Shown here: in pieces, positions 5,761 to 56,277 of the stretch
Position numbering within the stretch: the first letter of the stretch is position 1
How the letters are laid out: the number at the start of each line of letters is the position of its first letter
Assembly (NCBI RefSeq): GCF_006345805.1
Contig: NC_043006.1
Coordinates: forward strand, 7,750,001 to 7,814,000
From: Octopus sinensis
Lineage: Eukaryota
Length of the DNA stretch: 64,000 nt
Direction of reading: 5' to 3'
Program-made: the position numbers and the translations under genes
The notes under the pieces: generated by a model
Databases searched by the model: none
What the model was told of the DNA's origin: nothing
What the model saw: only the letters and a program-made list of their open reading frames with translations

Positions 5761-6177
5761 AGGCGCAGGAGTGGCTGTGTGGTAAGTAGCTTGCTAACCA
5801 ACCATATGGTTCCGGGTTCAGTCCCCTGCGTGGCATCTTGGGCAAGTGTCTTCTGCTATAGCCCCGGGCCGACCAATGCCTTGTGAGTGGATTTGGTAGA
5901 CGGAAACTGAAAGAAGCCTGTCGTATATATGTATATATATATGTATGTATGTGTGTGTTTGTGTGTCTGTGTTTGTCCCCCTAGCATTGCTTGACAACCG
6001 ATGCTGGTGTGTTTACGTCCCCGTCACTTAGCGGTTCGGCAAAAGAGACCGATAGAATAAGTACTGGGCTTACAAAGAATAAGTCCCGGGGTCGATTTGC
6101 TCGACTGAAAAAAGGCGGTGCTCCAGCATGGCCGCAGTCAAATGACTGAAACAAGTAAAAGAGTAAAAGAGTAAGAG

Positions 6178-6178
<1 letters not shown>
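5761..6178 (+). mobile_element. tRNA-derived SINE, family B (CORE-like central domain)
   Basis: Head GGCGCAGGAGTGGCTGTGTGGTAAG...GGTTCAGTCCC, then TTGGGCAAGTGTCTT (CORE-like), an internal microsatellite, and tail CAGCATGGCCGCAGTCAAATGACTGAAACAAGTAAAAGAGT. Several copies in window. Confidence 0.9.
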
Positions 6179-6214
<36 letters not shown>

Positions 6215-7790: not shown

Positions 7791-7877
7791 GTCTATTTTT
7801 GCTTTCATCTGGCAACAATAATAATTTTTTTAAGATACATAAAAATTTTCACTAAATTGATGGTTCTAATTAATCTA

Positions 7878-8108
7878 GGCGGCGAGCTGGCAGAAACGTT
7901 GGCACGCCGGGCGAAATGCTTAGCGGTATTTCGTCTGCGTTACGTAGTGAGTTCGAATTCCGCCGAGGTCGATTTTGCCTTTCATCCTTTCGGGGTTGAT
8001 AAATTAAGTACCAGTTACGCACTGGCGTTGATGTAATCGACTTAATCCGTTTCTCTGTCCTTGTTTGTCCCCTCTGTGTTTAGCCCCTTGTGGGTAATAA
8101 AGAAATAG
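7878..8108 (+). mobile_element. SINE family C (Meta-domain-like centre)
   Basis: GGCGGCGAGCTGGCAGAAACGTTGGCACGCC...GCCTTTCATCCTTTCGGGG...TAATAAAGAAATA. 16-bp TSD GGTTCTAATTAATCTA on both sides. Confidence 0.9.
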
Positions 8109-8559
8109 GTTCTAATTAATCTATGTTATACTTGATATTTCTTAAGCGTTGCATATCCATATGAAAGAAAATATTCTGGGCTGGGTAACGCTTTTCTTAG
8201 TAATTTCAATGTGATTAGTTAAACTTACGAACGGACCAATTTCTACAGTACTAGTCGACCCATTAGAAATTTTTGGAATATAAATATTATAAAAATGGCA
8301 CCTAGTTTTTTAAAATAAAAATTTACATTTTCATATTGTTGTGAAGGGGAAATAAAGTGGTCACAGGCCATACGTTACACACATACACACACACACAAGC
8401 ACACACATACTCACACACATATATTTGTATGCACACACTTACACACACGCACATGCGCGCGCACACACAGACACACGTATGTATATAAATGATGGTTGAC
8501 CACCACAACCGAGGTAGGCCATCAGTAATCACAATTACATTGCCATGCAAACCGCCAGG

Positions 8560-10950: not shown

Positions 10951-12971
10951 TCGATGGACATAATATTATATATCAATGTGTGTATGTATATATAATCTGT
11001 GTTTTGTAACCACCACGTTTTCTTTTCACAGCTATGTTAAAACGAGAAATTTATGTTTTACAAAACCAGGTGTCACTTTATATTTACATTTCAGACTATT
11101 CATAACAAGCCGAGTAATGAAGTATGAATTTGTTCATATGTGAGTTTAACTAATCGATTTGAAATTACCAGCAAATGCATTAGACATATTTTCCTATATA
11201 TGGATATGCAATGATTTAGTAAAATCAAGTATGACAGATACATGAACTAGAATCATCGAGTTAGTGTTAACTTGTATTATTCTTAAAAATCTGTATTATT
11301 GCAACCAGATCAATGCAGAAATATATAACGTGTAGCAGTGTTGCTTGATATTTTGTAGTGAATGCAAAATATTTATGATGGTTCAAATTCTGGTGAAAAA
11401 ATATATGAAACAACTTCCGTTAATGAAGTCAGCTTTTATGAGAAAAAACGTAAACAAGTGTAATATAATGCCCCAAACTACAATAATTGAATTCAGTTTG
11501 TTGTTTTCCAGTGTTGTATTTGTTTTTGGTTGCTTTACTTGGTCTCAAGAAACCTTGAAAAAAATGACACGTTGTCGGTATCCGTTGTGTGTATCGTTGC
11601 AGTAACTAATTAGTAAGTATTGCTTTGCTTATAGAAATAATATTGCATCCAATTTTTAATATCTAGCATGCAAGAAGATTTCTTTAATAAGTTTCAAACC
11701 AATCACAGTTATCCATAATATATCTGTATCGCTGTCTTACTTTCCTCTTATCTCAAATTTCGTGTATTTTCTGCTTTGTTATTCTTGTTTTGTGTCTTTT
11801 CTAAGTAAGATGGTATAAAGCAATTTTGTTAGCAAATTAGGAACTAAAAATATGTGCGAAATAGGAAATAATTCCGTATATGAACGGTAAAATAAAATAA
11901 AATAAAATAAAATAAAATAAACAGACAAAATGTAACTAATATCGTTTCTGCAGGCTTCAATTTTTACAAATAAAAAAATGCAAAATATTCTGATGTTCAG
12001 TTAATTAAATTGTTATTGAGAAACTTGAATTTAATATATTTACAGAACTTGTTGGTAGAAGTGAAACAGAAATCAACTAAAACATAAAGTAAATATTGAA
12101 ATATACTATAGAAACTAGTGTCTCGGTAATAAATGTAATGGAAATAGAAATAATATGAAGAAGATTATAACTTACGAAGTATTAAATGTAGCTAAAAACA
12201 AATAATTGAATAAACATGTAGAAATGTGTGTAATGATAATATAATTATACAAAAGAAAAAGAAAATTCTATAACAAGGCACGTGCACTTGTTTAAAGAAG
12301 TAAACTGAATAAAGATGGCGTCTTTTGAGCATAACAGAGTGTATTTATTGCTTGTATGACCAACTGTCGTATTCGAGGTAATTTTATTTTGTTGATCTTA
12401 TTTTTGTTTCAAATCTGTCAAGCAAATCATCTTTAAAGCAATTTATTACGGTTCAAAATTGTTCTCTAGCTATATCATTCCTATGAAACTCCCTTTGAGA
12501 AACATATATATTAATAAAACAACATTGTACTGATACGTCTATTACAATATATTTTAGTATTTGCCGAAACCCTAAAGCAATTTGATGGTTTCCGGTGCAG
12601 TGCATAGCTTGACATGGTTTTCTTTCTATACATTTCATTCCCAAACACATATAAACGCATACAGTTATCAAAACGGGGAAAGCAATAAAGTTTTCTTATC
12701 TTCATACTTCATATAAACCTTCAATTGCATGTTACCCATATTGTACAAAATTGATCTTTGATTTTTGCTATAAGGTTCGTAATCTTGTTTATCACGTTTT
12801 AGAGTAGATGAAAGCCATTAATTACCGTTGACTAATCTTTCGTCACTTACTATATTTGTCTCATTTTTTATATAGTATAAAATAGGAACGCCTATGCTTG
12901 TAACAATTGAATATGTACGTGTGTGTGTGTCTGTGTGCGCGCGTCTGTGCGTGTGTAAGAATAAATTTTCC

Positions 12972-13330
12972 AAAATGAATAAAGAAACTCGAAGGATTGC
13001 TTTGGTACAACGGTAGTACACGTATCATGTCTACCGGAGATGTGGATTCGAGTCCCGCTAGCAGTCTTCGACTTCTCTATCCAAGAGGTTTATTCAGCTC
13101 AAGATTAACATTATTAATCATCGCTTTGTGAACTTCGAGATTCTGTGCGTGTGCTTTGGAATCTCGAAGTTCACAAAGCGATGAATAATAATGTTAATCT
13201 TGAGCTGAATAAACCTCTCGGATAGAGAAGTCGAAGACTGCTAGCGGGACTCGAATCCACATCTCCGGTAGACATGATACGTGTACTACCGTTGTACCAA
13301 AGCAATCCTTCGAGTTTCTTTATCCATTTT
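12972..13330. repeat. near-perfect palindrome (172-bp arms, 15-nt loop) with tRNA-like sequence in each arm
   Basis: 12972-13143 is the reverse complement of 13159-13330 with 3 mismatches. Loop TGTGCGTGTGCTTTG. Confidence 0.95.
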
Positions 13331-14379
13331 AGACACTTTACTCTTACAGCGGGAATTGTATGTTATTGATGTCATAAAAGTTTCGAGAGAACGTGGAAGA
13401 ATTATTTTGAAATCTCGAAGCTCACATAAAACCATTATATACATGCTATTATTTACAGCTTCATGCCAGCTTCGAAATTGCCAAAAAGAATTACCATATT
13501 TTCCCTCGCAATCCTTGGCACACGCGCACACACGCACACACAGGCACACTCACAGATACACCCACACAGACAAACAGATATATCATACGTACATCCATAG
13601 ATATATATATACATAAATATATGTATTAGAGTAATAGCATATACTATATGCAGACAGCTGTTGCTGACCTATTAAGTTAAGATATGACATTTGTTGCTAG
13701 GCAAGTAACAAGAAATGGCAAACAATTAGTACCTGAGATTTATTGGTAGATATAATGCGTAATCTTATGAAATAAATGACTGGGTAGGTTATTATGATAA
13801 ATCTTTAGTTGTAACCTAGAAATACACAACTGTATATTAAGCAAGTCTGAATTTATTTGAAGCTGATAATTAAGTTGCCAAATATTGGTCAAATTAAGAG
13901 CACATTTGGTTAAGGAAAATTAGTATAAATTATAAGCTTGGCTGGTATAAACCTCGAATTTAGGTTGTATGATTTAATTTTGAAATCGTTTTTTACTTTT
14001 TTTTCATTATCTCTGCCCCCTTCCGCTTGACAGGTTTACCTCCCTTCGTCGGTTCCTTGTCGACACATAATGGGTTCATTTTGTTTTGTTTTTTTCCTCA
14101 TGATGTATTGAAAGAGCTGGGTGGGTAAAATTTAGCTCTCTAACATTAGGCATTTTTTTTGTATTACTACAGTGATGCTTTTCTTAGTAGGGTTCTGATA
14201 TTGTACCTGTAATTATTTATTATGTGCTTATTCATTAGGATTTATTCATAGTTAAGTGATATTTTGGAGCAGTAATGCCGTCTATAGCAGATATGTAACA
14301 TACATATATAAATATATATGTGTGTGTATGAGTGTGTGTGTTTTATGTGTTGCGTAGATGGACAGGCAGACAGACAGAC

Positions 14380-19379: not shown

Positions 19380-21680
19380 TAGGAGAAGAGGTAAACCTCA
19401 GAGTCTTGGTGGAAGATGTTACAAGTGTGGCGAAAAAGGCCACATACACTCTGAATGTAAAACAGGCAAGGAAAATAACCACCCAAGGAAGACTCTATAG
19501 CTGAGGAAAGTAAACCAGAGGTGGAGGCGCGGCTATCAGTAACGAAGCAACATAAACAGTCCTGAAGATGCAGAGAATCCAGAATGGATTACTCTCGGCT
19601 TACACAAGTAAAGAAGAAGAAAAAGATACCCCCACACTCAACAAAGACAGACACACCAACCACAAGCACACACGAACCCACCATCACAAGCGCACACGCA
19701 CCCACAAAAAGCACACGCACCCACAAACACACACGCACCCACAAACACAGGCGCATCCACCACCACAAACACAAACGAATCCACCACCACAAAAACACAC
19801 ACGTCCCACAAACTCCCCAATCCCCGCCAAGTAAATCATGCATTAATATCACAGCAATAAACATCAAAAGCACACTTTTAAAAAATGAAATTGAAAACAT
19901 CTCCACTGCAAATATATAGACGACCTGAAAATACAGTTGTCGCTCACCATGTCCAGTTTTACATAATAGACGGCATAAACTATATAATACAATCAAAAAA
20001 TCATTCCCGGAGGACGTAGGCCCGTTACAAATACATTTCTCTAATCATTTGTAATAAACCCACAAACTACACCACCTGAAGAAAGGAAAGAGGAGGGACT
20101 ACCCCAAAACACTAAGTTTGTTCCTTTTATGTTCTTGCCCCAATTAGGTTGTATAAATGTACGAAGCCTGGGTTCGGATTGGAAGTAAATATGTCTCCTT
20201 GACGATCTCAGGTTGCATAGAATGCATTTAGTAGTTGCTACTGAAAGCTACCTGTGTGGGCTGCAGGCTTTCTCACCCCTCCTAAACGGCTACAAGAAAT
20301 TTATTTTCTCTAAGCAAATCTGGAACAACATGGTCGTTCAGTAAACGAGCCCGGGGAGATGTGCAAAGTATTTCATGAGCATTTCGCCCAGCGTTTCGGG
20401 AGGGGCGGTGGATCGGAGCGTGGAGAGGACCTCGTGGACTTCCTAGCCAATTCGACACGTCTCTCGGGGCGGGAAGCAGAGTTTTGTGAACGCCCAATCA
20501 CAGATGCAGAGGTGGAGGACGCGTTATCGGACTGCGGCGAGGACAAGTCGTCGCGACTAGATGGTTTCCCCTATGAACTGTATTATAGTGTGCCAGGTTT
20601 GTTTGAGAACCCAATTGTACGCTTCTGTACCAACTTGCAGCAGAACAGGATTCCCTAGTCTCTGAGCCGGGGTGCCGCTGCTAAGCAAGGCCCCAAAGAA
20701 GGGGGACGTAATTAATAATTTCAGACCCATCACTCTGCTTAACGCAGAGTTGAAGATTTTAGCGAAGGCTTCAGCAAAATGGTTGGCGCAAGTCGTGAGT
20801 AAAGTTGTTGTGAGGCGCAAACGTGTGCCATCCCTGGCAGATCAATTCACGACAATCTTCTCCATCTTCTCTGCTATTCTTTAGAGAGGGTAAATAGAAT
20901 TCCTGGCAAGGGTGGAGCTATGGTCCATTTAGACCAATCAAAAGCGTTCGATAGTGTTGACCATCAGTATCTGGCGGCGGTCCTTGCGGCGCCCGTTTTT
21001 GGCCCGACCTTCCGTAGGTGAATCATCGCTTTATATAGCGACATCGAACCGATAGTTCGGGTGAACGGTTTCTTTTCGAAACCGTTCTGCATTGAGCGAT
21101 CGGTGCATCAAATGTGTCCTATCTCTCCACTTTTGTACGTTTTGGCCCTAGAGCCATTGGTGAGGAAGTTGGAGGCTATGAGGGGCACTCCACGAGATCT
21201 AGGGGGCGGAAATCAGTTTCGGCTTATGCAGATGACATTACCGTCATCGTATTCCGGGTCGAACACCTATAGGTGAGGCCATAAGAGATTACGAAGCGGT
21301 GGCAGGAGCAAAAATTGTCAGTCGGCTTGCAACTTTATTCTTTTCATATGAAAAAGAAAAATAAGTCTGGAGAAGAGATGTCTGTCGCACGGAGTGTTTC
21401 GGAAAAAATGGAAGACTGTAGCAAATGTATTGAGAGTGAGTGAATCTGTTTGAGCAAGAACACAAACCCATAAAAAAGGTTTCAGTGCTGGAATGTGGTT
21501 TGTGTGGTCAACCACGTCCCTCATTTTATAATTGTTAATCATTCGCTTTTCATTGTTGTATTGCATTTTTGTAATTTTATCTTTACGTTATCACGTTGTT
21601 ATTCGCATTCGATCCTCTACCTCTTGCCTGTCCTTGTTTTGTCCACTCTTCATTTAGACCGTAATGGTTCATAAAGAAAA
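19380..21680 (+). mobile_element. Tx1-like (L1 clade) LINE remnant, internally deleted
   Basis: Gag knuckle CYKCGEKGHIHSEC (19417-19458); APE start LGCINVRSL (20144); RT motifs NFRPITLLN, DQSKAFDSVDHQYL (20932), QMCPISPLLYVLALEPL, AYADDI (21222); C-terminus FRKKWKTVANVLRV; 3' UTR ending ATAAAGAAAA. Confidence 0.85.
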
Positions 21681-21819: not shown

Positions 21820-22228
21820 CATCATTCATCATCATTGTTCGACCGTGGTCGAGACAATGGAATTTACTATGTTACGCCAGACTTCACGGTCCATCATAGC
21901 ATTACGGAGGTCCTGTTGCTGGATGCCTGTATCCCTGGAGATTACATCAGGGTAGGAGAGTGTGCGCCCTCTGGTATTGCGAGTAGATGGCTTCCAGAGG
22001 AGAAGAGTAGAAATTACTTCTTTTTCAGCTCTACAACAATGTCCAGAAAACTGGACTCTCCTACCTTTCACAAGAGATGACACAGGTGGTAATTTCCCAT
22101 ATATTTGCATTTTGGTTGGATGGCGCTTCCACGAGAGATTTTGAGCTCTCATAAGGAGGCGAGTGTAGGTTCCATCCAACCGCCTCTCAAGCTTCTTTGA
22201 TAACGTCCAGGTTTCTGAGCCATATACG
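21820..22228 (-). mobile_element. RTE-clade LINE 3' fragment
   Basis: YGSETWTLSKKLERRLDGTYTRLL...RRVQFSGHCCR...AMMDREVWRNIV, followed by a (TGA)n tail. Confidence 0.85.
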
Positions 22229-22780
22229 TACACACACACACATATGTATATAGCCATAAATAATATACACAGAAGTGAGTGCGTACGATAACACATGTAT
22301 TTTTAAACCCGTTATACTTCCGTAGAAAATGTTACTTTTGAGCTGACGCAGGCTTTTCTTTCTTCTTATTTGTCGTAGTAACAGTTCTTTTAGCCTTTCA
22401 TACTTGCCTTACTTAAAGTACAATAGAGATTATTTTATACGAACCAAACGTACGGAGCAAATTTGACCTTTTCTATTCAAATGCCAAGTTAAAATTTAGT
22501 ATTAGTTTGGATTACTAGCACGTGTTGTTAGAATGTTCTGTAGAAAATCTGTTTTATGAAAGTGAAACATTTCCGGTACAGAAATGAAAAAGGATAAATC
22601 ATAAATCCCTCACTTTCAGTCTTAACTTCTTTACTTCAAAGACAACATTTCAATTTGTTTTTAATTCATGGAAAAAGACTGCAGCGCTTAGTATGGACAA
22701 AGACCTGAAATATGGAGGAAGAGGCAATGGTCACCGAACCCGAAAGGACGAAAAGCAAAGCCAGAATCGGACAAAATACC

Positions 22781-23011
22781 TATTTCTTTACTACCCAAAA
22801 GAGGCTAAACACTGAGGGAACAAACAAGGACAGACAAACGGATTAAGTCGATAACATCGACCCCAGTGCGTAACAGGTACTTATTTAATCGACCCCGAGT
22901 GGATGAAAGGCAAAGTCGACCTCGGCGGAATTTGAACTCAGAACGTAGCGGCAGACGAAACACGGCTACGCATTTCGCCCGGCGTGCTAATGTTTCTGCC
23001 AGGTCGCCGCC
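22781..23011 (-). mobile_element. SINE family C
   Basis: Reverse complement of the 7878 element. Confidence 0.9.
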
Positions 23012-23423
23012 TTTATTTGGGCGGAATACCGGTTAGCATTTTGTCCAGCATGCTAACGATTCTGTCCGCTTAATATCATTGAGAGTTTCAAATTTTAGAA
23101 CCAAGTACCACATATTAGAGGAGGATCTTAGTAATAACAGTGTAGCAAAACGGCGGTGCGTCAGCATGGCCACAGCTCTGAGCTGAAACTAGAGAAGGAA
23201 AAAAAAAACAATTTTAGGAGATGGGAATATCCGATGGCATCGATTTTAATAAGGATGGAAGACAAAGATGACCACGATAGTTTTTGGATTCAGGAATAAA
23301 GAAACACCACTGAACAATTTGCTCGCCACCATTACGCTTCAGCTGGGTCAAAGACTTAATGATGTTAATAATCCATTGTACTGTCGGCACATCGCCTGAA
23401 ATTTCGCGACGCTATATGATCCA

Positions 23424-24207
23424 GGCCGGCGAGCTGGCAGAAACGTTAGCACGCCGGGCGAAATGCGCTGCCGCATTTCGTCTGCCGTTACGTTCCGAGT
23501 TCAAATTCCGCCGAGGTCGACTTTGCCTTTCATCCTTCCGGGGTCGATAAATTAAGTACCAGTTACGCACTGGGGTCGATGTAATCGACTTAATCCCTTT
23601 GTCTGTCCTTGTTTGTCTCCTCTGTGTTTAGCCCCTTGTGGGTAATAAAGAAATAGGTATTTGGTCTGCCGCTACGTTCTGAGTTCAAATTCCGCCAAGG
23701 TCGACTTTGCCTTTCATCCTTCCGGGGTCGATAAATTAAGTACCAGTTACGCACTGGGGTCGATGTAATCGACTTAATCCCTTTGTATGTCCTTGTTTGT
23801 CTCCTCTGTGTTTAGCCCCTTGTGGGTAATAAAGAAATAGGTATTTGGTCTGGCGCTACGTTCTGAGTTCAAATTCCGCCGAGGTCGACTTTGCCTTTCA
23901 TCCTTCCGGGGTCGATAAATTAAGTACCAGTTACGCACTGGGGTCGATGTAATCGACTTAATCCCTTTGTCTGTCCTTGTTTGTCTCCTCTGTGTTTAGC
24001 CCCTTGTGGGTAATAAAGAAATAGGTATTTGGTCTGCCGCTACGTTCTGAGTTCAAATTCCGCCGAGGTCGACTTTGCCTTTCATCCTTCCGGGGTCGAT
24101 AAATTAAGTACCAGTTACGCACTGGGGTCGATGTAATCGACTTAATCCCTTTGTCTGTCCTTGTTTGTCTCCTCTGTGTTTAGCCCCTTGTGGGTAGTAA
24201 AGAAATA
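23424..24207 (+). mobile_element. SINE family C with three extra 184-bp tandem units
   Basis: Unit junctions AAATAGGTATTTGG at 23651, 23835 and 24019. TSD TATATGATCCAGGCC at 23413-23427 and 24208-24222. Confidence 0.95.
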
Positions 24208-24488: not shown

Positions 24489-24962
24489 TGCACATCTCCC
24501 CGGGCTCGTTTACTGAACGACCATGTTGTTCCAGATTTGCTTAGAGAAAGTAAATTTCTTGTAGCCGTTTAGGAGGGGTGAGAAAGCTTGCAGCCCACAC
24601 AGTTAGCTTTCAGTAGCAACTACTAAATGCATTCTATGCAACCTGAGATCGTCAAGGAGACATATTTACTTCCAATCCGAACCCAGGCTTCGTACATTTA
24701 TACAACCTAATTGGGGCAAGAACATAAAAGGAACAAACTTAGTGTTTTGGGGTAGTCCCTCCTCTTTCCTTTCTTCGGGTGGTGTAGTTTGTGGGTTTAT
24801 TACAAACGATTAGAGAAATGAATTTGTAACGGGCCTACGTCCTCCGGGAATGATTTTGATTGTATTATATAGTTTATGCCGTCTAATATGTAAAACTAAA
24901 CATGGTGAGCGACAACTGTATTTTCAGGTTGTCTATATATTTGCAGTGGTGATGTTTTCAAT
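24489..24962 (-). repeat. inverted duplicate of 19890-20365
   Basis: Reverse complement matches over about 475 bp with only scattered differences. Confidence 0.95.
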
Positions 24963-25210: not shown

Positions 25211-25621
25211 ATTTATTACTCACAAGGGGCTAAACATAGAGGGGACAAACAATGACAGACGGACGGAATAACTATTTCTTTACTACCCAAAAGGGGCTAA
25301 ACATAGAGAGAACAAACAAGGAAAGACAAACGGATTAAGTCGATTACATCGGCCCCAGTGCGTAACTGGTACTTATTTAATCGACCCCGAATGGATGAAA
25401 GGCAAAGTCGAGCTCGGCGGAATTTGAACTCAGAACGTAGCGGCAAACGAAATACGGCTACGCATTTCGCTCGGCGTGCGTAACTGGTACTTAATTTATC
25501 AACCTCGAAAGGATGAAAGGCAAAGTCGACCTCGGCGGAATTTGAACTCAGAACGTAGCGGCAGACGAAATACGGCTACGCATTTCGCCCGGCGTGCTAA
25601 CGATTCTGTCAGCTCGCCGCC
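25211..25621 (-). mobile_element. SINE family C with internal duplication and extra tail
   Basis: Central domain present twice, joined at GTGC microhomology near 25476. TSD TCTGTTACTGATCCT at 25192-25206 and 25633-25647. Confidence 0.85.
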
Positions 25622-26442: not shown

Positions 26443-26673
26443 TATTTCTTTACTACCCACAAGGGGCTAAACACAGAGGAGACGAACAAGGACATACAAA
26501 CGAATTAAGTCGATTACATCGACCCCAGTGCGTAACTGGTACTTAATTTATAGACTCCGAAAGGATGAAAGGCAAAGTCGACCTCGGCGGAATTTGAACC
26601 CAGAACGTAACGGCAGACGAAATACGGCTACGCATTTCGCCCGGCGTGCTAACGTTTCTGCCAGCTCGCCGCC
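26443..26673 (-). mobile_element. SINE family C
   Basis: Full-length reverse-complement copy. Confidence 0.9.
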
Positions 26674-27998
26674 TTATATGTTTCTACGTTATAACAAACG
26701 TAAGCTGTTTCCTGTAGATGGACGAATCATTTCAACAGTTTCTTATAAGACCCACTTTCAACAGATTCATTCTCAGACCTTCCGGCACGTATTTCATGAA
26801 GGATTCATTTAAAAAAAAGTAAATTAAGTAAGGTTAATTTATAATTCTCCCATTATTTCTCTTTATTAAGACAAGTGTTAACATAATTTACTCAGTTTGT
26901 GGTAGATACGCACTTATTAGTTCGCGATACACTTATAGTTTCCCAAGAATGAAGAATACCACATTTGGAACATTCACTGAGTTTATTGTTACATTGTAGA
27001 TTTGCTCTACCGAATATATTGCATATCACAAGTTAACTTTTTCGTGCGTATGTGTTGTTGCGTATGTACTTATTGCTTATTAATCAGAAACAATTAATCA
27101 GATGCATGTATTTACATAAATAGTTTCAACGTGCAATATATAATTTAATCTCAGAAAAGCATTCAATTAGTGACTGTAATATATATAAAGCTTATCGAAT
27201 CAGTTTTAGAATCATGAATATTTATAATGCAAATATTTCCCAAGTTCTAGACGTTTTGCTGTTAACAAAAATTACGCTATAAAGTTGAAAACAAAAACAT
27301 AAAACATATTAAACTCGAACTTTCTTCAAGAATCTTTATTACACATTTTCTATAAGGAATTTAGAGATTTAACATATTATAAGAATAATTAAGGTTTAGA
27401 ATTCAGATATTTTCTGATTATTTTGTGTAGGAGGTGATAAGAGTGTTTTATATTAACTCGCAACTTTCAGCGGGTTATTAATATTAATTTCTTTACATTG
27501 TCACGATACAATGAAGCAATAGAGTTGATTGAATCTGCCGCAGTATATTTAATCTCTGTGGAGAGAGAAGAAAATACAAAATTGACTGGCAGGGTTGAGG
27601 TATTCAGCTTTGATTCTACTTAACGACTAACTTACAATCTTGTTACAAACACTTTAGAAATGATAAACATATTTAAGGCTTCAGTTTGTCTAATTTTTGC
27701 TTTGATGTTCATTACTTTTATTTTATATTAAATTTTGCTCCACATATTCTTTCTTTCATTTCTGTATGGTGTTCACGTCACTGAATTACATTTGTCAGAT
27801 TCCCTTTTTTCCCTCTCCACCAAACAAGGATTACCCAATATATGGTTTAATATACAATCGAATCGCCCGTAATATGGTTAACTGTAAAATGATATCAGTA
27901 AAAATGATTGAAGAGCATTTCTAATTTCAAGTTAGATTCTAGCTAAGCGATAGGACATACATCTTACCAAAACATGAATCTAGGCTAGTGTAACATTA

Positions 27999-33502: not shown

Positions 33503-33740
33503 CTCTTACTCATTTACTCTTTTACTCGTTTCAGTCATTTGACTGCGGCCATGCTGGAGCACCGCCTTTAGTCGAGCAAATCGACCCCGGGACTTATTCG
33601 TTGTAGGCCAAGTACATATTCTATCGGTCTCTTTTGCCGAACCGCTAAGTGACGGGGACGTAAACACACCAGCATCGGTTGTCAAGCAATGCTAGGGGGA
33701 CAAACACGGACACACAAACACACACACACACACACACACG

Positions 33741-33783
<43 letters not shown>

Positions 33784-33925
33784 GACAGGTTTCTTTCAGT
33801 TTCCGTCTACCAAATCCACTCACAAGGCATTGGTGGGCCCGGGGCTATAGCAGAAGACACTTGCCCAAGATGGCACGCATGTGGTTAGTTAGCAAGCTAC
33901 TTACCACACAGCCACTCCTGCGCCT
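33503..33925 (-). mobile_element. SINE family B
   Basis: Reverse complement of the 5761 element with a partial head deletion. Confidence 0.9.
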
Positions 33926-37741: not shown

Positions 37742-37790
37742 AATTTAGATATACATATATATTATTTTGTCTGAAGAGAGTCATACTCTT

Positions 37791-37930
37791 TCAGTGATTT
37801 ATTATTTAACACACTCACCGGTTCGATTTCCACCCATTTACTTATTTATTTTTTAAAAAATTTTAGAAAAATAAATAAGTATATGAGTGGAAGTCTAACC
37901 GGTGAGTGTGTTCAGTAATAAGGCACTAAA
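37791..37930. repeat. imperfect palindrome (~65-bp arms)
   Basis: AACACACTCACCGGTT/AACCGGTGAGTGTGTT and ACTTATTTATTTTT/AAAAATAAATAAGT. Confidence 0.9.
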
Positions 37931-38017
37931 ACAGAATGACTATCCCCAGACACAATAAAATATGCTTCAACACACGAATTCACATAAAGAATATTGCAAA
38001 CTCAATACGAAAACGAA

Positions 38018-39531: not shown

Positions 39532-39757
39532 GGCGAGCTGGCAGAAACGTTAGCACGCCGGGCGAAATGCGTAGCCGTATTTCGTCTGCCGTTACGTTCT
39601 GAGTATAATTCCGCCGAGGTCGACTTTGCCTTTCATCCTTTCGGGGTCGATAAATTAAGTACCAGTTACGCGCTGGGGTCTATATAATCGACTTAATCCG
39701 TTTGTCTGTCCTTGTTTGTCCTCTCTGTGTTTAGCCCCTTGTGGGTAGTAAAGAAAT
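39532..39757 (+). mobile_element. SINE family C
   Basis: Full-length copy. Confidence 0.9.
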
Positions 39758-40263
39758 GGATATAAAAAAAACGTATAGAAGAAAAGAAAGAGAATTGGCA
39801 CAGGAAAAACAGAGTCTAATAGAGTGGTAGAGTATGGTAGAAAGGTCAAAATCTGTGAAAGTATTGAACAAATAAGCAAGAACTTGCTGCAGATAGCGTA
39901 ACACTTGGTTCGCAATGAATGCACAAATATGCTATTAAACTATAAACGCAGCGACGATTAAAGCATGCAGGCAGTATGGTGCCGCTGCTGGGTTAACGAT
40001 ATGAGGCAATGAATTGTACAGAAACATTAAAAGTGTCAGATAACGAACACTGAGTATGGGAATATGGCAGTATGTAGTAGTGAACAAAGAAGCTAAGATA
40101 ATCCTGCAGGACATGTGGAGCATTCCGTGAGTTGAATGGAATTAAGGCGAGCGTATATGTGAAATTATTTCTGGGTATACTGGAATGTGATAGCAAAGCA
40201 TAAACCGCATAAATCGAAGTCCGTGTTAACGAAAATCGCGATAAATGGGATCTCCCTTTTATA

Positions 40264-40663
40264 TACTCTCTCTTTTACTCTTTTACTTGTTTCAGTCATT
40301 TGACTGCGGCCATGCTGGAGCACCGCCTTTAGTCGAGCAAATCGACCCCTGGACTTATTCTTTGTTAGCCCAGTACTTATTCTATCGGTCTCTTTTTCCG
40401 AACCGCTAAGTGACAGGGACGTAAACACACCAACATCGGTTGTTCAGCAATGCTAGTGGGAGAAACACAGACACACATACACATATATATATATATAACA
40501 TATATACGACAGGCTTCTTTCAGTTTCCGTCTACCAAACCCACTCACAAGGCATTGGTCGGCCCTGGGCTATTGTAGAAGACAGTTGCCCAAGATGCCAC
40601 GCAGTGTGACTGAACCATGTGGTTGTTTAGCAAGCTACTTACCACACAGCCACTCCTGCGCCT
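40264..40663 (-). mobile_element. SINE family B
   Basis: Reverse-complement copy. Confidence 0.9.
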
Positions 40664-41061
40664 ATGTTTATATATACGTATGATTTTGATTGTGCGTTTA
40701 TTGTGTATATTTATTTGACTGGGAATAAGTGTATCAATCATGTTTGTATTTGTGAAGGCTGGTTGAAATGAACGGCACGCTTATTATGATAGCCCTACAA
40801 CGGGGGAAAGGTATTGTTCCTTAGCAGAAATGAGCTGATCGTTCGCTATCTAACAATACCCGTGGAACATTTACATTAATATTCTTACAGTTAGCAAGAT
40901 ACCGAGATGACATTAATTAAGCCTGTGTAAATTTAAGGGTTGGTAGAAACGACTGCAAAGAATCCCTTTAATATCTTGTTGCCTGAAAAATCCGTTCATA
41001 CAACGACAATGCCATCACTAAATATTCTTTTCCATTTAGACAAACATTCTTTACGAATGAA

Positions 41062-43409: not shown

Positions 43410-43625
43410 AGGCGGTGAGCTGTCAGAATCGTTAGCACGCCGGACAAAATACTTAGTGATATTTCGTCCGTCTTTACGTTCTGAGTTCAAATCCCGCCGA
43501 GGTCGACTTTGCCTTTCATTCTTTCGAGGTCGCTAAATTAAGTACCGGCCGAGCACTGGAGTCACTGTAATCGACTTGTCTCCTCCACCAAAATGTCAGG
43601 CCTTGTACCTCTAGGAGAAAAAATT
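43410..43625 (+). mobile_element. SINE family C variant (alternative tail)
   Basis: Same head and centre; tail CAGGCCTTGTACC... instead of the TCCTTGTTTGTCC tail. Confidence 0.75.
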
Positions 43626-43905: not shown

Positions 43906-44351
43906 TCTCTTTTACTCTTTTACTCTTTTACTTGTTCCAGTCATTTGACTGCGGCCATGCTGGAGCACCGCCTTTAATCGAGCAACTCGACCCCGGGACT
44001 TATTCTTTTGTAAGCCCAGTACTTATTCTATCGGTCTCTTTTTCCGAACCGCTAAGTAACGGGGACATAAACACACCAGCATCGGGGACAAACACAGACA
44101 CAATGCTAGGGGACAAACACAGACACAATGCTAAGGGGACAAACACAGACACACAAACACACACGCACATACATATATATATGTATACGACAGGCTTCTT
44201 TCAGTTTCCGTCTACCAAATCCACTCACAAGGCTTTGGTCGGCCCGAAGCTATAGTAGAAGACACTTGCCCAAGGTGCCAAGCAGTGGGACTGAACCCGG
44301 AACCATGTGCTTGGTAGACAAGCTACTTACCGCACAGCCACTCCTGCGCCT
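43906..44351 (-). mobile_element. SINE family B with an internal ~25-bp triplication
   Basis: GGGACAAACACAGACAC occurs three times at about 44084-44155, the first two followed by AATGCTA. Flanking direct repeat TGCTTTCTTTCTCAATTA at 43881 and 44359. Confidence 0.9.
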
Positions 44352-44616
44352 ATTCGTTTGCTTTCTTTCTCAATTAACTCTATATTAATTCATTACTATT
44401 ATTATTATTGTTGTTGTTCTTGTTACTGTTGTTGTTGTTGTTGCTGTTTTACTTCTCAGAACGCTCGGCCTTGTTGGCTCCGGTAGTTTCCGTGAGAGCG
44501 AACAGCAGCCTACTTTTAGAGGTCTCAGAGCGCCTCTTTACGCACATTACTTAGTTGTTAATTATTGTGGGAGACATTCCACATCCAAGCGCCTATCTCA
44601 AATTATTATTATTATT

Positions 44617-45714: not shown

Positions 45715-48310
45715 TTCAGTAGTTTTATTTTTATAGCGTGCTTTCACTTCACTACCGAGCGCAGCTCTGTGTGCCTTGGGTATGTGCTGTGATTTGTTGT
45801 GATGCTCTGATGGTTATTGTATGGAAAGTGTTCTGCGTAGGATGTGTGCAGTGCCTAGTAGTGCAATTTTCTGTATGTTATATGTGTTTGTAAGTCCTGG
45901 TGTTTTTGTTATGTATTTGTCTGAATATTTTTTTATCATGCCTAATGCACCTACTATGATAGGAATTGTTTCTGTTTTCAGATTCCACATTCTAGTTACC
46001 TCTATGTCCAGGTCTTTGTATTTTGAGAGTTTCTCCATTTCTTTTAGAGACACGTTGTCATCTGCCGGTATTGATACATCAATTAGAAAGCATTTTTTTG
46101 TTCATGATCTCTGACAACTATATCTGGCCTGTTGGCCTTAATTTCTCTATCTGTGTGTATTGGCATATCCCAGAGTATGGTTGCTTTCTCGTTTTCTGTA
46201 ACCTTTTCTGGTGTGTGCCTATACCATCTTTTTTCTGTTGTTATTCCATAATGTTGGCATAGCTTCCAATGTATGTAGGTTCCAACTCTGTCATGTCTGT
46301 GAATATATTCCTTCTTAGCCAGGACTGGGCAGCTAGAGATAATATGATTTATTGTTTCTTGTCCATCTCCACATATTCTGCAGTTACTTGTAATATTTCT
46401 TTTCATTACATGTTTTTGGTAATTTCTGGTGGGGAGGCTTTGGTCTTGTGCTGCAATTAAAAATTCCTCTGTCTCTGCTTTGAGTCCTGAGCTTCTCAAC
46501 CATTGCTGGGATTTTTCTTTGTCTATTTCTTTTGCGTTTAGTTTAGTGCAGTATTTACCATGAAGGGGCTTTTCTTGCCATCGTTTTATCATGGTTCGTT
46601 GCTGTTCTATTTTTAGTTTGGATTTCATTTGTTTTATAGCTTTTGTTGTTTCTTCATCATCTTCTTCTTCTTCTTCTTCTTCTTCTTCTTCTTCTTCATG
46701 TTTATTATGTGGTATGATTTCTTGTTTGTATTTGTCAGCTTCCTTAAATACTGAGAACAGTTTTTTGTTTTGCTCGTGTTTTGCTGCTATCTGGATCAGT
46801 TTTCCTTCCTTCTGAAGTAGGTATTTTTGCAGTCCTATGGTGGTTATTTTATAGTAGTTTTCCAGCTGTATAAGGCCTCTACCACCTTCTATACGTTGTA
46901 TATATAGTCTTTCTATGTCAGATTTTGGGTGATGCATCCTAGATCCTGTCAGTATTTTCTTGTTTTCCTATCTATTTGGACAGTTCATTTCGTGTCCAGT
47001 TAAGGATATTGTAGCTGTAACTTATAACTGGGACAGCTAAAGTGTTGATACCTATTATCTTGTTTTTAGCATTGAGCTCTGTTTTTAGTATTGATCTAAC
47101 TCGTCTATAATATTCTTTTTTTATTTTCTCTTTCATTTGTGTGTGTTGTGTCTTATCTAGTTCATGGATTCCTAAGTATTTGTAAGTTTGGCTTTGGTCT
47201 AATTCTTTTATTTCATTGGTTTTATCTAGTGTGATGTTGTTACTCTTAACTAGTTTTCCTCTTTTCATGGTTACTTTGGCGCATTTTTCTAATCCAAATT
47301 TCATTTGGTAAATCCATGAACTGTCTTTAATAGTGTTTCCAGCTGTTTGTCATTTGCAGCGTATAGTTTTAGGTCATCCATATATAAAAGGTGGCTGATC
47401 GTTTTGCCGTAACATTTATATCCGCATCCAGTTCTATTTAGCATATCAGATAGAGGTGACAGTGCCAAGCAGAAAAGGAGTGGAGAGAGCATGTCTCCCT
47501 GGAATATTCCTCTTCTAATGGGGATGTCTTTGGTTTTCATGAGTCCCTCTTTTGTTTGGAGGTGTAGGACTGTTTGCCATTTATTCATAGAGTGCTCTAT
47601 GAATTTTATGATTGTTGGTGCTACTTTGTTAATGGCTAGTGTTTCGAGGATCCATGTGTGGGGGATGCTATCAAACGCCTTTTTGTAGTCAATCCAGGCC
47701 ATACTGAGGCCTTTCTTCTTTCTGTGGCTGTCTTCAGTTACGGCTTTATTAATCATTAGTTGATCTTTTTTAGCCATATGAGCCTTTGCGGCATCCTTTC
47801 TGCTCTTCTGGGAACAGTTTGTTTTCGTCCAGGTGCTTGTTCAGCCTTTGCGATATCACTGCAGTAAATGCCTTGAACATAGTAGGGAGGCAGATTATTG
47901 GTCTGTAGTATTCTGGTTTTGCTGTTTCATTTGATTTGGGAATTAAGATGGTTTTCTCCTTGGTGAGCCATTCAGGCATTGTCTCTGGCTCTGCTAGTAT
48001 GCTGTTAAAGTTTTCAGCCAGCTTTTTGTGCATTCCTGTTTGATATTTCAACCAGAAGTTGGGGATCTTGTCATGCCCAGGTGCCTTCCAGTTGCTTAGA
48101 TTTTGCAGTGCCTGGGTGACCTCTTCAGTTGTTATGGGGGTCCAAAGTTGTTCAGATGCCGAGTTTGTTATTTTGATACTCCTTTTTTTTGGCTGTTCGT
48201 TCGCCGACCATATTTCTCTCCAGAATTCTTCCAATTCTTCTGCCGTTGGTGCTGCAGTTACTTCTATTTTATTTTTTACCAGTTCTTGGTAGAACTTTTT
48301 GGGGTTGGAG
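45715..48310 (-). mobile_element. R4/Dong-clade non-LTR retrotransposon, 5'-truncated and frameshifted (RT plus restriction-like endonuclease)
   Basis: WKAPGHDKI; AWIDYKKAFDSIPH; RGIFQGDMLSPLLF; HLLYMDDLKLYA; RLYIQRIEGGRGL; CRICGDGQETINHIISSC; RHDRVG; NRPDIVV; EKLSKYKDLDIE. Both ends lie in (TAA)n. Confidence 0.93.
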
Positions 48311-48410: not shown

Positions 48411-48922
48411 AGACGTTGCACTGTATACAATATCGTGAGAATGTTGATTGAAAATTTTGTGTCTACCGTGGCTTTGCACTGTTTGTCAAGTCACAGCAAG
48501 GACCTCAGGCAGACAGCACTTTTCGCAATATGCGTGCAGTTCCAAGTAATGCCGACTTTTGCAATACATTTAAATTGTAGGGTATTTCTAAGTTAAAACC
48601 CCACCGAGGTCCACTTTGCCTTTCATCCTTTAAGGGTCGATAAAATAAGTACCAGTCATGTATTAGGGTCAGTTTAATCGACTAGCGCCGCCCACATCTA
48701 AAAATTTCAAGCCTTGTACCTATAACATTAATATTTCAATTGGGTTTTGTTTAAAAAAATTTTTCTAGGGCTACATTGTGATATTTTAGCTGTTTCTTCG
48801 TACAGATAGCTTTTATATTTATGATTCCAGCATGTTTTCATCGTCTTTTTCTTTTCAGCTAAGAGTTTTAGCTCAGAGCTGTGGCCATGCTGATGCACCA
48901 CCGTTTAGAAACAATGTGTGAC

Positions 48923-49040
48923 ACTTACAACACCTAGGTTTCCCAAGCGGTCACCCATCTAAGTACCAACTAGGCTCGACGTTGCTTAACTTCGGTGATC
49001 GGACGAGAACCGGTGCTTTCAACGTGACATTGCCGCAAGC
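48923..49040 (-). rRNA. 5S rRNA gene copy, solitary, probably a pseudogene
   Basis: Minus strand reads GCTTGCGGCAATGTCACGTTGAAAGCACCGGTTCTCGTCCGATCACCGAAGTTAAGCAACGTCGAGCCTAGTTGGTACTTAGATGGGTGACCGCTTGGGAAACCTAGGTGTTGTAAGT (118 nt). Terminal helix can pair. No oligo-T terminator directly downstream. Confidence 0.9.
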
Positions 49041-55900: not shown

Positions 55901-56043
55901 TTAGAATAATACAAAATACACAGTCAAAAGGAAATGACTTGTGTTAGAGAGAACCGTTGTTCATTATAACACACATTTAAAAATTGATTATGAATAAATA
56001 TCAGACGTCACGTGATGTACGAAGATACAATATCTGCAGATCA

Positions 56044-56277
56044 AGGCGGTAAGCTGGCAGAAACGTTAGCACGCCGGGTGAAATGCTTAGCAGTATTTCG
56101 TCTGCCGTTACGTTCTGAGTTCAAATTCCGCCGAGGTCGACTTTGCCTTTCATCCTTTCGGAGTCGATAAATTAAGTACCAATTACGCACTGGGGTCGAT
56201 GTAATCGACTTAATCCGTTTGTCTGTCCTTGTTTGTCCCCTCTATGTTTAGCCTCTTGTGGGCAATAAAGAAATAAA
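56044..56277 (+). mobile_element. SINE family C
   Basis: Full length, with 17-bp TSD ATACAATATCTGCAGAT. Confidence 0.92.

What the first reader, a model, noticed from the sequence alone, without database searches (positions are those of the whole stretch)
12972..13330. Palindrome with two inward-facing tRNA-like units, each ending at a T4 run: candidate Pol III long-hairpin RNA element
Seen: 172-bp arms, 15-nt loop, only 3 mismatches. Each arm contains a tRNA-like block (12995-13066 on +, mirrored on -): pairable acceptor-like ends GATTGCT/AGCAGTC, D-arm GTAC-AACGGTA-GTAC with an A-box-like TGGTACAACGG, and a B-box-like GGATTCGAGTCCC. The anticodon arm does not fold. Reading from either head, the first run of four T is at the far end of the palindrome (13327-13330 on +, 12972-12975 on -). 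Established: internal A/B boxes drive Pol III, and T4 or longer can terminate it. Inference: either strand could make a ~335-nt RNA folding into a ~150-bp duplex, a substrate for ADAR or Dicer. Alternatively this is a tRNA-derived fold-back mobile element. I cannot tell whether it matches an already catalogued octopus repeat.
Basis: partly seen in the sequence, partly recalled or inferred. Interest (0 to 1): 0.78.

Follow-up and report, generated by a model that had tools for sequence, protein, structure and literature searches.

The report
Mirror-image pair of decayed tRNA-like repeats
A 395-base stretch of non-coding DNA is a real, nearly perfect palindrome made of two mirror-image copies of a 190-base unit carrying a worn-out tRNA-like sequence. 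It is most likely a recent local inverted duplication of a retroposon-like insertion, an ordinary kind of structure in repeat-rich animal genomes, and nothing here shows it is a dedicated hairpin-RNA gene.

Summary
The arms are 12954-13143 and 13159-13348 (190 nt, 96%), with a 15-nt spacer. All 7 differences are substitutions, and 5 lie in the outer 25 nt.

Each arm holds a 71-nt tRNA-like module (12996-13066 on +, 13236-13306 on -). Rfam tRNA scores it 26.2 bits, below the gathering score of 29, and ARAGORN finds nothing. The anticodon stem is lost and the T stem is imperfect. The B box is near consensus and the A box is partial.

The T4 positions are as stated, but 11-15% of equal-length windows in this sequence also lack T4/A4.

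The unit has no other copy in the 64 kb window and none in any collection I could search. No eukaryotic genome collection was available.

There is no target-site duplication (TSD) around the whole palindrome. A perfect 12-nt direct repeat (TCTGTGCGTGTG) brackets the left arm only.

Best reading: a single tRNA-derived, SINE-like insertion was later mirrored by a local fold-back or template-switch event. Pol III hairpin-RNA production is possible but untested. Palindromic SINE pairs are already described in molluscs. Interest is low to moderate.

The parts
12911..12956 (.). Imperfect (TG)n microsatellite directly left of the palindrome; the target context of the left arm
   Evidence: D2, I3-I5
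12944..12955 (+). Left copy of the perfect 12-nt direct repeat TCTGTGCGTGTG (TSD-like)
   Evidence: The exact 12-mer occurs 3 times in 64 kb, and two of the three bracket the left arm.
12954..13143 (+). Left arm of the palindrome. The unit bracketed by the direct repeat is 12956-13141 (186 nt): a 40-nt AT-rich leader, the tRNA-like module, then a 75-nt body.
12996..13066 (+). tRNA-like module. A-box-like TGGTACAACGG at 13003-13013; B-box-like GATTCGAGTCC at 13046-13056. Anticodon stem lost.
   Evidence: 26.2 bits, gathering score 29; ARAGORN negative
13142..13153 (+). Right copy of the 12-nt direct repeat. It overlaps the inner end of the left arm and the spacer.
13144..13158 (.). 15-nt spacer or loop, TGTGCGTGTGCTTTG
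13159..13348 (-). Right arm, the inverted copy. No direct repeat of its own flanks it.
13236..13306 (-). Mirror tRNA-like module, identical to the left one
13327..13330 (+). First TTTT downstream of the + head; possible Pol III stop
   Evidence: Its position is statistically unremarkable.
12972..12975 (-). First TTTT downstream of the - head (AAAA on +)

Best explanation
This is a genuine, evolutionarily young palindrome with a two-step history.

Step 1 (inferred from the 12-nt direct repeat): a 186-bp unit inserted into a TG-rich microsatellite and duplicated 12 bp of target. The unit consists of a 40-nt AT-rich leader, a 71-nt decayed tRNA-derived module and a 75-nt body. The variable-length TSD fits a SINE-like or retropseudogene-like retroposition.

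Step 2 (inferred): a break or stalled fork just beyond the unit's inner end was repaired by fold-back (snap-back) or template-switch synthesis. That synthesis copied the whole unit backwards and stopped on entering the TG tract. The result is an inverted copy 15 nt away.

The tRNA defects are shared by both arms, so the module was already degenerate when it was mirrored.

The locus most likely has no dedicated function. If it is transcribed, from its own weak A/B boxes or by read-through, the RNA would form a roughly 165-bp near-perfect duplex. That is the kind of substrate that ADAR and Dicer act on.
For: Shown:
- The palindrome has 190-nt arms at 96% identity and a 15-nt spacer.
- All 7 differences are substitutions, the flanks are unique and the window contains no N. 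This argues for real divergence and against an artefact.
- The tRNA-like module has zero arm-to-arm differences, so the missing anticodon stem and the T-stem mismatches are shared.
- The tRNA match covers the whole model with all arm lengths kept, at 26.2 bits. The window's abundant SINE-like family gives no tRNA hit even at E<=10.
- A perfect 12-nt direct repeat brackets 12956-13141 only. The right arm has none, and the whole palindrome has none of 6 nt or more.
- No other copy of the unit exists in the 64 kb by blastn word 7 or nhmmer.
- The right arm ends 2 nt into the TG tract.

From the literature:
- Fold-back inverted duplications leave a short single-copy spacer and use 2-8 bp of inverted microhomology (PMC3907307).
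- tRNA-derived SINEs in molluscs do occur in palindromic arrangements (PMC11481361).
Against: - The unit starts 40 nt upstream of the tRNA-like module and has no A-rich or simple-repeat tail at its inner end. Both are atypical for a Pol III-transcribed SINE.
- The 12-nt repeat lies in TG-rich DNA, so a chance origin is not excluded. My rough estimate from the 12-mer's frequency in this window is about 5e-4.
- Five of the 7 mismatches fall in the outer 25 nt. My binomial estimate for this under uniform divergence is about 6e-4. A single clean duplication does not predict it. It needs an extra assumption: error-prone synthesis near the end of the copied tract, or centre-biased gene conversion.
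- Genome-wide copy number is unknown, because no eukaryotic genome collection was available.
- The fold-back microhomology cannot be checked, because it is now part of the arms.
Confidence: 0.5

Rival explanations
1. The palindrome is one copy of a multi-copy fold-back or MITE-like mobile element whose long terminal inverted repeats derive from a tRNA or SINE. The whole 395 bp moves as a unit.
For: - The structure is a long, near-perfect inverted repeat with a tiny loop.
- TA dinucleotides at 12956-57 and 13345-46 could be a Tc1/mariner-type TSD. TA is self-complementary, so this cannot be told apart from the palindrome itself.
- A second, unrelated complex palindrome lies in the same window at 37757-37963. 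Such structures may therefore be common in this genome.
Against: - No TSD of 6 nt or more flanks the whole palindrome.
- The arm termini are the most diverged part, with 5 of 25 nt differing against 2 of 165 inside. Functional TIR ends are normally the best conserved part.
- No second copy was found in 64 kb, in the translated searches or in the DNA scans.
- The 12-nt direct repeat brackets one arm, not the pair.
Confidence: 0.2
2. One reading: the locus is a working gene in which either tRNA-like head recruits TFIIIC and Pol III, transcription runs through the palindrome to the far T4, and the roughly 335-nt hairpin RNA feeds ADAR or Dicer.
For: - The B box GATTCGAGTCC has one deviation (G53A). 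U8, A14, G18 and G19 are kept in the A-box region, and the A-B spacing is tRNA-like.
- No T4 occurs before 13327-13330 on + or 12972-12975 on -.
- The predicted hairpin has an MFE of -279.9 kcal/mol, z = -39.7.
- The tRNA-like module has no arm-to-arm differences.
Against: - The tRNA score is below Rfam's gathering threshold and ARAGORN is negative.
- The A box matches only 6 of 9 specified consensus positions.
- A T4-free interior occurs in 11-15% of equal-length windows.
- The hairpin energy follows from any palindrome.
- The identity of the modules is explained just as well by the youth of the duplication.
- No conservation, expression or occupancy data are available.
Confidence: 0.1
3. Two independent insertions of the same low-copy retroposon family landed in one TG microsatellite in opposite orientations. 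This could happen if the family is mobilised by a microsatellite-targeting non-LTR element.
For: - The left arm has a TSD-like 12-nt repeat inside TG-rich DNA.
- The outer (5') ends of the two arms differ more than the rest, as could be the case for two different source copies.
- Non-LTR families that target (AC)n-type repeats are known (my own knowledge, not tested here).
Against: - The right arm has no TSD, and its outer flank is not TG-rich.
- Both arms begin and end at the same nucleotides to within 2 nt.
- A family young enough to give 98.8% identity over 165 nt should have left other copies, and none is seen in 64 kb.
Confidence: 0.12
4. Assembly artefact: a fold-back chimeric read or a mis-join created the second arm.
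For: Perfect-looking palindromes are a known artefact class for amplified or long-read libraries (my own knowledge). No reads are available to check.
Against: - The arms differ at 7 positions, all substitutions, with no indels.
- The palindrome is short and sits in the middle of the sequence.
- Different unique sequence lies on each side, and there are no gaps (N) in the window.
- Artefactual fold-backs give identical arms running to a read or contig end.
Confidence: 0.06

Closest known systems
Palindromic (inverted) arrangements of tRNA-derived SINEs in mollusc genomes (bivalve HCD-SINEs; PMC11481361)
   Same: Both have a tRNA-related head plus a body, two copies in opposite orientation close together, and lie in a mollusc-type repeat-rich genome. 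The authors likewise suggest that hairpin transcripts from such pairs could be Dicer substrates.
   Different: Those pairs are built from members of abundant, defined families that have LINE-derived tails. This unit has no other detectable copy, carries a 40-nt leader before the head, has no recognisable tail, and shows the same end points in both arms. That pattern fits local duplication better than two insertions.
Fold-back inverted duplications (PMC3907307)
   Same: An inverted copy lies directly next to the original, separated by a short single-copy spacer, with the junction compatible with a few nt of inverted microhomology.
   Different: The human cases are kilobases to megabases long, with spacers of 0.8-70 kb and terminal deletions. 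Here the copy is 190 bp with a 15-nt spacer and both flanks are retained. That needs a second template switch or an end-joining step.
Inverted-repeat Alu pairs as ADAR substrates (my own knowledge)
   Same: Two inverted copies of a Pol III-derived retroposon would form long dsRNA when co-transcribed.
   Different: IRAlus are independent insertions about 10-15% diverged, usually hundreds of bp apart and transcribed by Pol II as part of host genes. Here the copies are 96-99% identical and 15 nt apart.
Drosophila hairpin-RNA (hpRNA) loci producing endo-siRNAs (PMC10317233), and the inverted-duplication model of new plant miRNA genes (PMC3237417)
   Same: A long inverted repeat makes a perfect or near-perfect hairpin that could feed Dicer. 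It arises by inverted duplication of pre-existing sequence.
   Different: hpRNA loci are Pol II transcripts whose arms are homologous to target genes. No target, transcript or small RNA is known here, and the proposed promoter is an internal Pol III type.
tRNA-like Pol III promoters driving downstream hairpins (murine gammaherpesvirus 68 tRNA-miRNA units; my own knowledge)
   Same: A tRNA-like A/B-box module sits upstream of a hairpin, followed by a T-run terminator.
   Different: In those units the tRNA-like part folds by itself and is cut off by tRNase Z. Here it would be buried inside the long duplex, and function is untested.

Membership tests
Functional tRNA gene | Covariance-model score above threshold, with a cloverleaf that includes the anticodon stem | tested here: not met
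   Rfam RF00005 gives 26.2 bits, below the gathering score of 29. ARAGORN finds 0 genes. The anticodon arm is 17 nt long but only about 2 of 5 pairs form.
Functional tRNA gene | T-run terminator shortly after the 3' end | tested here: not met
   The next TTTT on + is 261 nt downstream of 13066.
tRNA-derived SINE | tRNA-related head with A and B boxes | tested here: inconclusive
   The match to the tRNA model is end to end. The B box matches 10 of 11 positions and the A box 6 of 9. The score is below threshold, though well above the abundant SINE-like family of the same window, which gives no tRNA hit.
tRNA-derived SINE | Element begins at or near the tRNA-like 5' end and ends in an A-rich, simple-repeat or LINE-derived tail | tested here: not met
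   The unit bracketed by the direct repeat starts 40 nt upstream of the head (12956 against 12996). It ends in ...GAACTTCGAGAT with no tail.
tRNA-derived SINE | Flanking target-site duplication of variable length | tested here: met
   A perfect 12-nt repeat TCTGTGCGTGTG brackets 12956-13141, the left arm only. Caveat: the context is TG-rich.
tRNA-derived SINE | Many dispersed copies in the genome | not testable with these tools
   No other copy in 64 kb. No eukaryotic genome collection was available. Proxy searches were empty.
MITE or fold-back DNA transposon | TSD of family-specific length flanking the whole inverted-repeat element | tested here: not met
   A systematic scan finds nothing of 6 nt or more. 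Only an ambiguous self-complementary TA remains.
MITE or fold-back DNA transposon | Conserved terminal inverted-repeat ends | tested here: not met
   The outer 25 nt are 80% matched against 98.8% for the inner 165 nt.
MITE or fold-back DNA transposon | Multiple copies | not testable with these tools
   As for the SINE copy-number row: no second copy in the window, and no host genome to search.
Pol III type 2 transcription unit or hpRNA locus | Transcription, Pol III/TFIIIC occupancy, small RNAs or editing | not testable with these tools
   Only sequence is available. The T4 placement is as claimed but is statistically uninformative.

The most novel reading that the evidence does not exclude
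The palindrome is a self-contained Pol III hairpin-RNA gene. Two convergent tRNA-derived internal promoters each drive transcription through the palindrome to a T4 on the far side. The result is a roughly 335-nt RNA with a roughly 165-bp perfect stem, used as an endogenous Dicer or ADAR substrate in a cephalopod-type genome. A Pol III-driven hpRNA of this design has not, to my knowledge, been described in animals.
Probability: 0.07. Interest if true: 0.75.

Novelty: new member of a known kind. Interest (0 to 1): 0.3.

Why it matters
Under the best explanation this is a small, datable example of how a repeat-rich invertebrate genome makes perfect hairpin-forming DNA out of a retroposed tRNA relic. 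Such structures are the raw material from which ADAR substrates, endo-siRNA loci and new miRNA genes are thought to arise, and they are also fragile sites. Its practical value is as a test locus. One look at long reads and at small or total RNA would show whether young palindromes of this kind are transcribed and edited in cephalopods. Only the minority reading, an autonomous Pol III hairpin gene, would be surprising to specialists.

Tried and rejected
1. Other copies in the window. blastn (word 7, E<=10) and nhmmer of the arm against the window found only the two arms.

2. A possible third, degenerate copy at 13349-13530. It was suggested by a 19/21 match at 13406-13426 and a shared AAGGATTGC. 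Alignment scores are not above shuffles or neighbouring control segments, so I rejected it.

3. A larger old palindrome implied by the (TG)n on the left and the (CA)n at 13520-13576. Alignment of the flanks shows nothing beyond the 190-nt arms. This is most likely a microsatellite coincidence.

4. Family members through translated searches. A 50-aa open frame of the arm had no word-sharing candidate in 5.8 billion proteins. phmmer against 1.84 billion representatives returned only repetitive proteins with summed weak matches.

5. Independent assemblies of the locus. Exact look-ups of three window ORFs found none on record.

6. Sampling same-species DNA through a retrotransposon ORF. The closest hits sit on contigs of about 1 kb (SRR7158634, GCA_024449705.1), so they were of no use. 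A paper search on those accessions found nothing.

7. DNA pattern scans.
   - A metagenome scan with a 23-mer gave 0 hits.
   - A metagenome scan with a 19-mer gave 6 hits of 19-31 nt, with no further similarity and no tRNA at the sites, so they are chance matches.
   - Two viral-contig scans gave 0 hits.

8. The miRNA-family hits across the palindrome (MIR837 and others) are all below their gathering scores. They are generic responses to any long hairpin and I rejected them.

9. CpG-decay explanation for the D-arm differences from a tRNA-Trp-like sequence that I recalled from memory. The arm's CpG observed/expected ratio is 1.28 against 0.87 for the window, so this is not supported.

10. Relation to the second palindrome at 37757-37963: none.

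11. The organism was not verified. The window looks like a repeat- and microsatellite-rich metazoan genome at 36% GC, and its retrotransposon relatives come from marine invertebrates.

Full report
**What is there**

The region 12954-13348 is a true palindrome. The arms are 12954-13143 and 13159-13348, 190 nt at 96% complementarity, around a 15-nt spacer TGTGCGTGTGCTTTG. A base-by-base comparison gives 7 differences (12961, 12966, 12968, 12971, 12978, 13083, 13117). All are substitutions and there are no indels. A local alignment of 850 nt on either side shows that homology stops at 12954/13348.

Five of the seven differences lie in the outer 25 nt, which are 80% identical, against 98.8% for the inner 165 nt. 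By my binomial estimate this is unlikely under uniform divergence, at about 6e-4. The outer 25 nt still match far better than chance (20 of 25), so they belong to the duplicated unit.

**The tRNA-like module**

Rfam's tRNA model matches 12996-13066 (+) and its mirror 13236-13306 (-) end to end, model positions 1-71. The score is 26.2 bits, just under the gathering score of 29. The E-value is 5e-4 for the 96-nt stretch, 7e-3 for 1.3 kb and 0.35 for the whole window. ARAGORN finds no tRNA in the window.

In the alignment:
- The acceptor stem pairs.
- The D arm is perfect (GUAC / AACGGUA / GUAC).
- The anticodon arm keeps its 17-nt length but has lost its stem.
- The T arm has non-canonical pairs.
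- The B-box region GATTCGAGTCC differs from GGTTCGANNCC only at G53.
- The A-box region TGGTACAACGG matches 6 of 9 specified positions of TRGCNNAGTGG. Both consensus sequences are from my own knowledge.

These two hits are the only tRNA-like hits in the 64 kb at E<=1. As a yardstick, the abundant ~235-bp SINE-like family of the same window gives no tRNA hit even at E<=10 in a 300-nt search.

I conclude that the module is very probably tRNA-derived but is not a tRNA gene. The two modules are identical, so all the defects are shared and predate the duplication, or were homogenised after it.

**T runs and the hairpin**

The T4 positions are as stated. They carry little weight, because 11-15% of equal-length windows in this sequence lack both T4 and A4, and 14% of 335-nt windows lack T4 on +. 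The RNA from 12996 to 13330 folds into one long stem (-279.9 kcal/mol, z = -39.7). That is a property of any palindrome. The many sub-threshold miRNA-family hits have the same trivial cause.

**Is it a repeat family?**

Within the window the unit has no other copy by blastn (word 7, E<=10) or nhmmer. The window is nonetheless full of other interspersed families. A suspected third, degenerate copy at 13349-13530 does not beat shuffles or neighbouring controls.

No eukaryotic genome collection was available, so I tried proxies:
- The longest open frame of the arm against 5.8 billion proteins gave no candidate.
- The same frame by phmmer against 1.84 billion representatives gave only repetitive proteins with summed weak matches.
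- Exact look-ups of neighbouring ORFs were not on record.
- Metagenome and viral-contig pattern scans gave nothing, or chance matches of 19-31 nt.
- Sampling same-species DNA through a retrotransposon ORF failed, because the closest relatives sit on contigs of about 1 kb.

Genome-wide copy number therefore remains unknown, and it is the decisive missing fact.

**Boundaries**

A systematic scan finds no direct repeat of 6 nt or more flanking the whole palindrome. Only a self-complementary TA remains, and it is uninformative. By contrast, a perfect 12-nt direct repeat, TCTGTGCGTGTG, sits at 12944-12955 and 13142-13153. It brackets exactly the left arm (12956-13141, 186 nt). The right arm has none.

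The exact 12-mer occurs only three times in the window. From that frequency I estimate roughly 5e-4 for finding it by chance within a few nt of the palindrome centre. The TG-rich context makes this a soft number.

The left flank is an imperfect (TG)n tract (12911-12956). The right arm's outer end stops 2 nt into the corresponding sequence.

**Most likely history (inference)**

A 186-bp unit inserted into TG-rich DNA with a 12-bp target-site duplication. The unit comprises a leader, the tRNA-derived module and a body. A variable-length TSD of this kind is typical of target-primed reverse transcription, so the unit was probably a SINE-like or retropseudogene-like retroposon.

Later, a break or stalled fork a few nt beyond the right TSD copy was repaired by fold-back or template-switch synthesis. 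That synthesis copied the unit backwards and terminated on reaching the TG tract. It left the 15-nt spacer as the fold-back loop. Fold-back inverted duplications with short single-copy spacers and 2-8 bp of inverted microhomology are documented, at much larger scale, in PMC3907307.

Two points do not fit a classical SINE: the 40-nt leader before the head and the lack of a tail. The mismatch cluster at the outer ends needs an additional assumption, either error-prone synthesis near the end of the copied tract or centre-biased conversion within the palindrome.

**Rivals**

- A multi-copy fold-back or MITE element is disfavoured by the missing TSD, by the arm ends being the least conserved part, and by the one-arm direct repeat. 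Only a genome-wide search can exclude it.
- Two independent insertions of one family into the same TG tract would explain the more divergent 5' ends. It does not explain the missing TSD of the right arm or the coincident end points.
- An assembly artefact is unlikely, given 7 substitution differences, no indels, unique flanks on both sides and no gaps.
All its other supports (the T4 position, the hairpin energy, identical modules) are expected anyway.

**Comparison with what is known**

Palindromic arrangements of tRNA-derived SINEs are reported in molluscs. In one bivalve about 3% of HCD-SINE copies lie in tandem-like or palindromic structures, and the authors make the same suggestion that hairpin transcripts could feed Dicer (PMC11481361). 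From my own knowledge, inverted Alu pairs are the classic ADAR substrates. Drosophila hpRNA loci (PMC10317233) and the plant inverted-duplication model for new miRNA genes (PMC3237417) show what such structures can become.

The present locus works like these, as a potential dsRNA source. It fails or cannot be tested on the defining features of a tRNA gene, a canonical SINE, a MITE and an hpRNA locus; see the membership table. I file it as a new member of a known kind: a young inverted duplication of a tRNA-derived retroposed unit.

**Verdict**

Interest is 0.3. The most novel reading not excluded is an autonomous, convergent Pol III hairpin-RNA gene, at a probability of about 0.07.

Noticed in passing
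window 48922-49040 (-), with 46083-48234 (-): A full-length 5S rRNA match (102 bits, gathering score 38) has no T4 terminator right after it. It lies about 690 bp upstream, on the same strand, of a frameshifted non-LTR reverse transcriptase (RVT_1 in 47301-48234, zf-RVT in 46083-46937). It could be a 5S pseudogene, a 5S-derived SINE, or a 5S gene hit by a retrotransposon.
   Followed up: partly
window 7873-8110, 22770-23013, 23427-23660, 25268-25484, 26443-26675, 39532-39765, 43410-43577, 56040-56275: An abundant ~235-bp interspersed, SINE-like family at 88-94% identity between copies. It contains GAGTTCAAATTCCGCC and GGGGTCGATTAAATAAGTACC motifs. Rfam tRNA does not detect its head even at E<=10. 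It is unrelated to the palindrome unit.
   Followed up: partly
window 23475-24207: A tandem array of four units of about 184 bp, derived from the same SINE-like family, at about 98% identity between units.
   Followed up: no
window 37757-37963: A second complex (not simple-repeat) palindrome: 103-nt arms, 83% complementary, 1-nt spacer. It is unique in the window and unrelated to the first. It has a GGTTCGATTTCC motif near its centre but no tRNA hit. Two unrelated single-copy palindromes in 64 kb suggest that local inverted duplication is frequent in this genome.
   Followed up: partly
window 19890-20365 and 24489-24962: A 476-bp inverted repeat pair at 97% identity, about 4.1 kb apart, enclosing the SINE cluster and a retrotransposon-like ORF (21832-22296). 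It may mark the ends of a larger element or a larger inverted duplication.
   Followed up: no
window 5761-6183, 33503-33925, 40260-40665, 43909-44352: A ~420-bp interspersed repeat family at 80-90% identity.
   Followed up: no
window 13406-13426: A 19/21-nt match to the palindrome's inner end (TTTGAAATCTCGAAGCTCACA against 13155-13175), 251 nt downstream (D3). Extended alignment is not significant.
   Followed up: yes
L003 465-495: A metagenome contig (Ga0307510_10188551) shares 29 of 31 nt with the acceptor and D-arm part of the module (GATTGGCTTGGTACAACGGTAGTACACGTAT), with no similarity beyond that and no tRNA there. It is probably chance after selecting on the 19-mer.
   Followed up: yes
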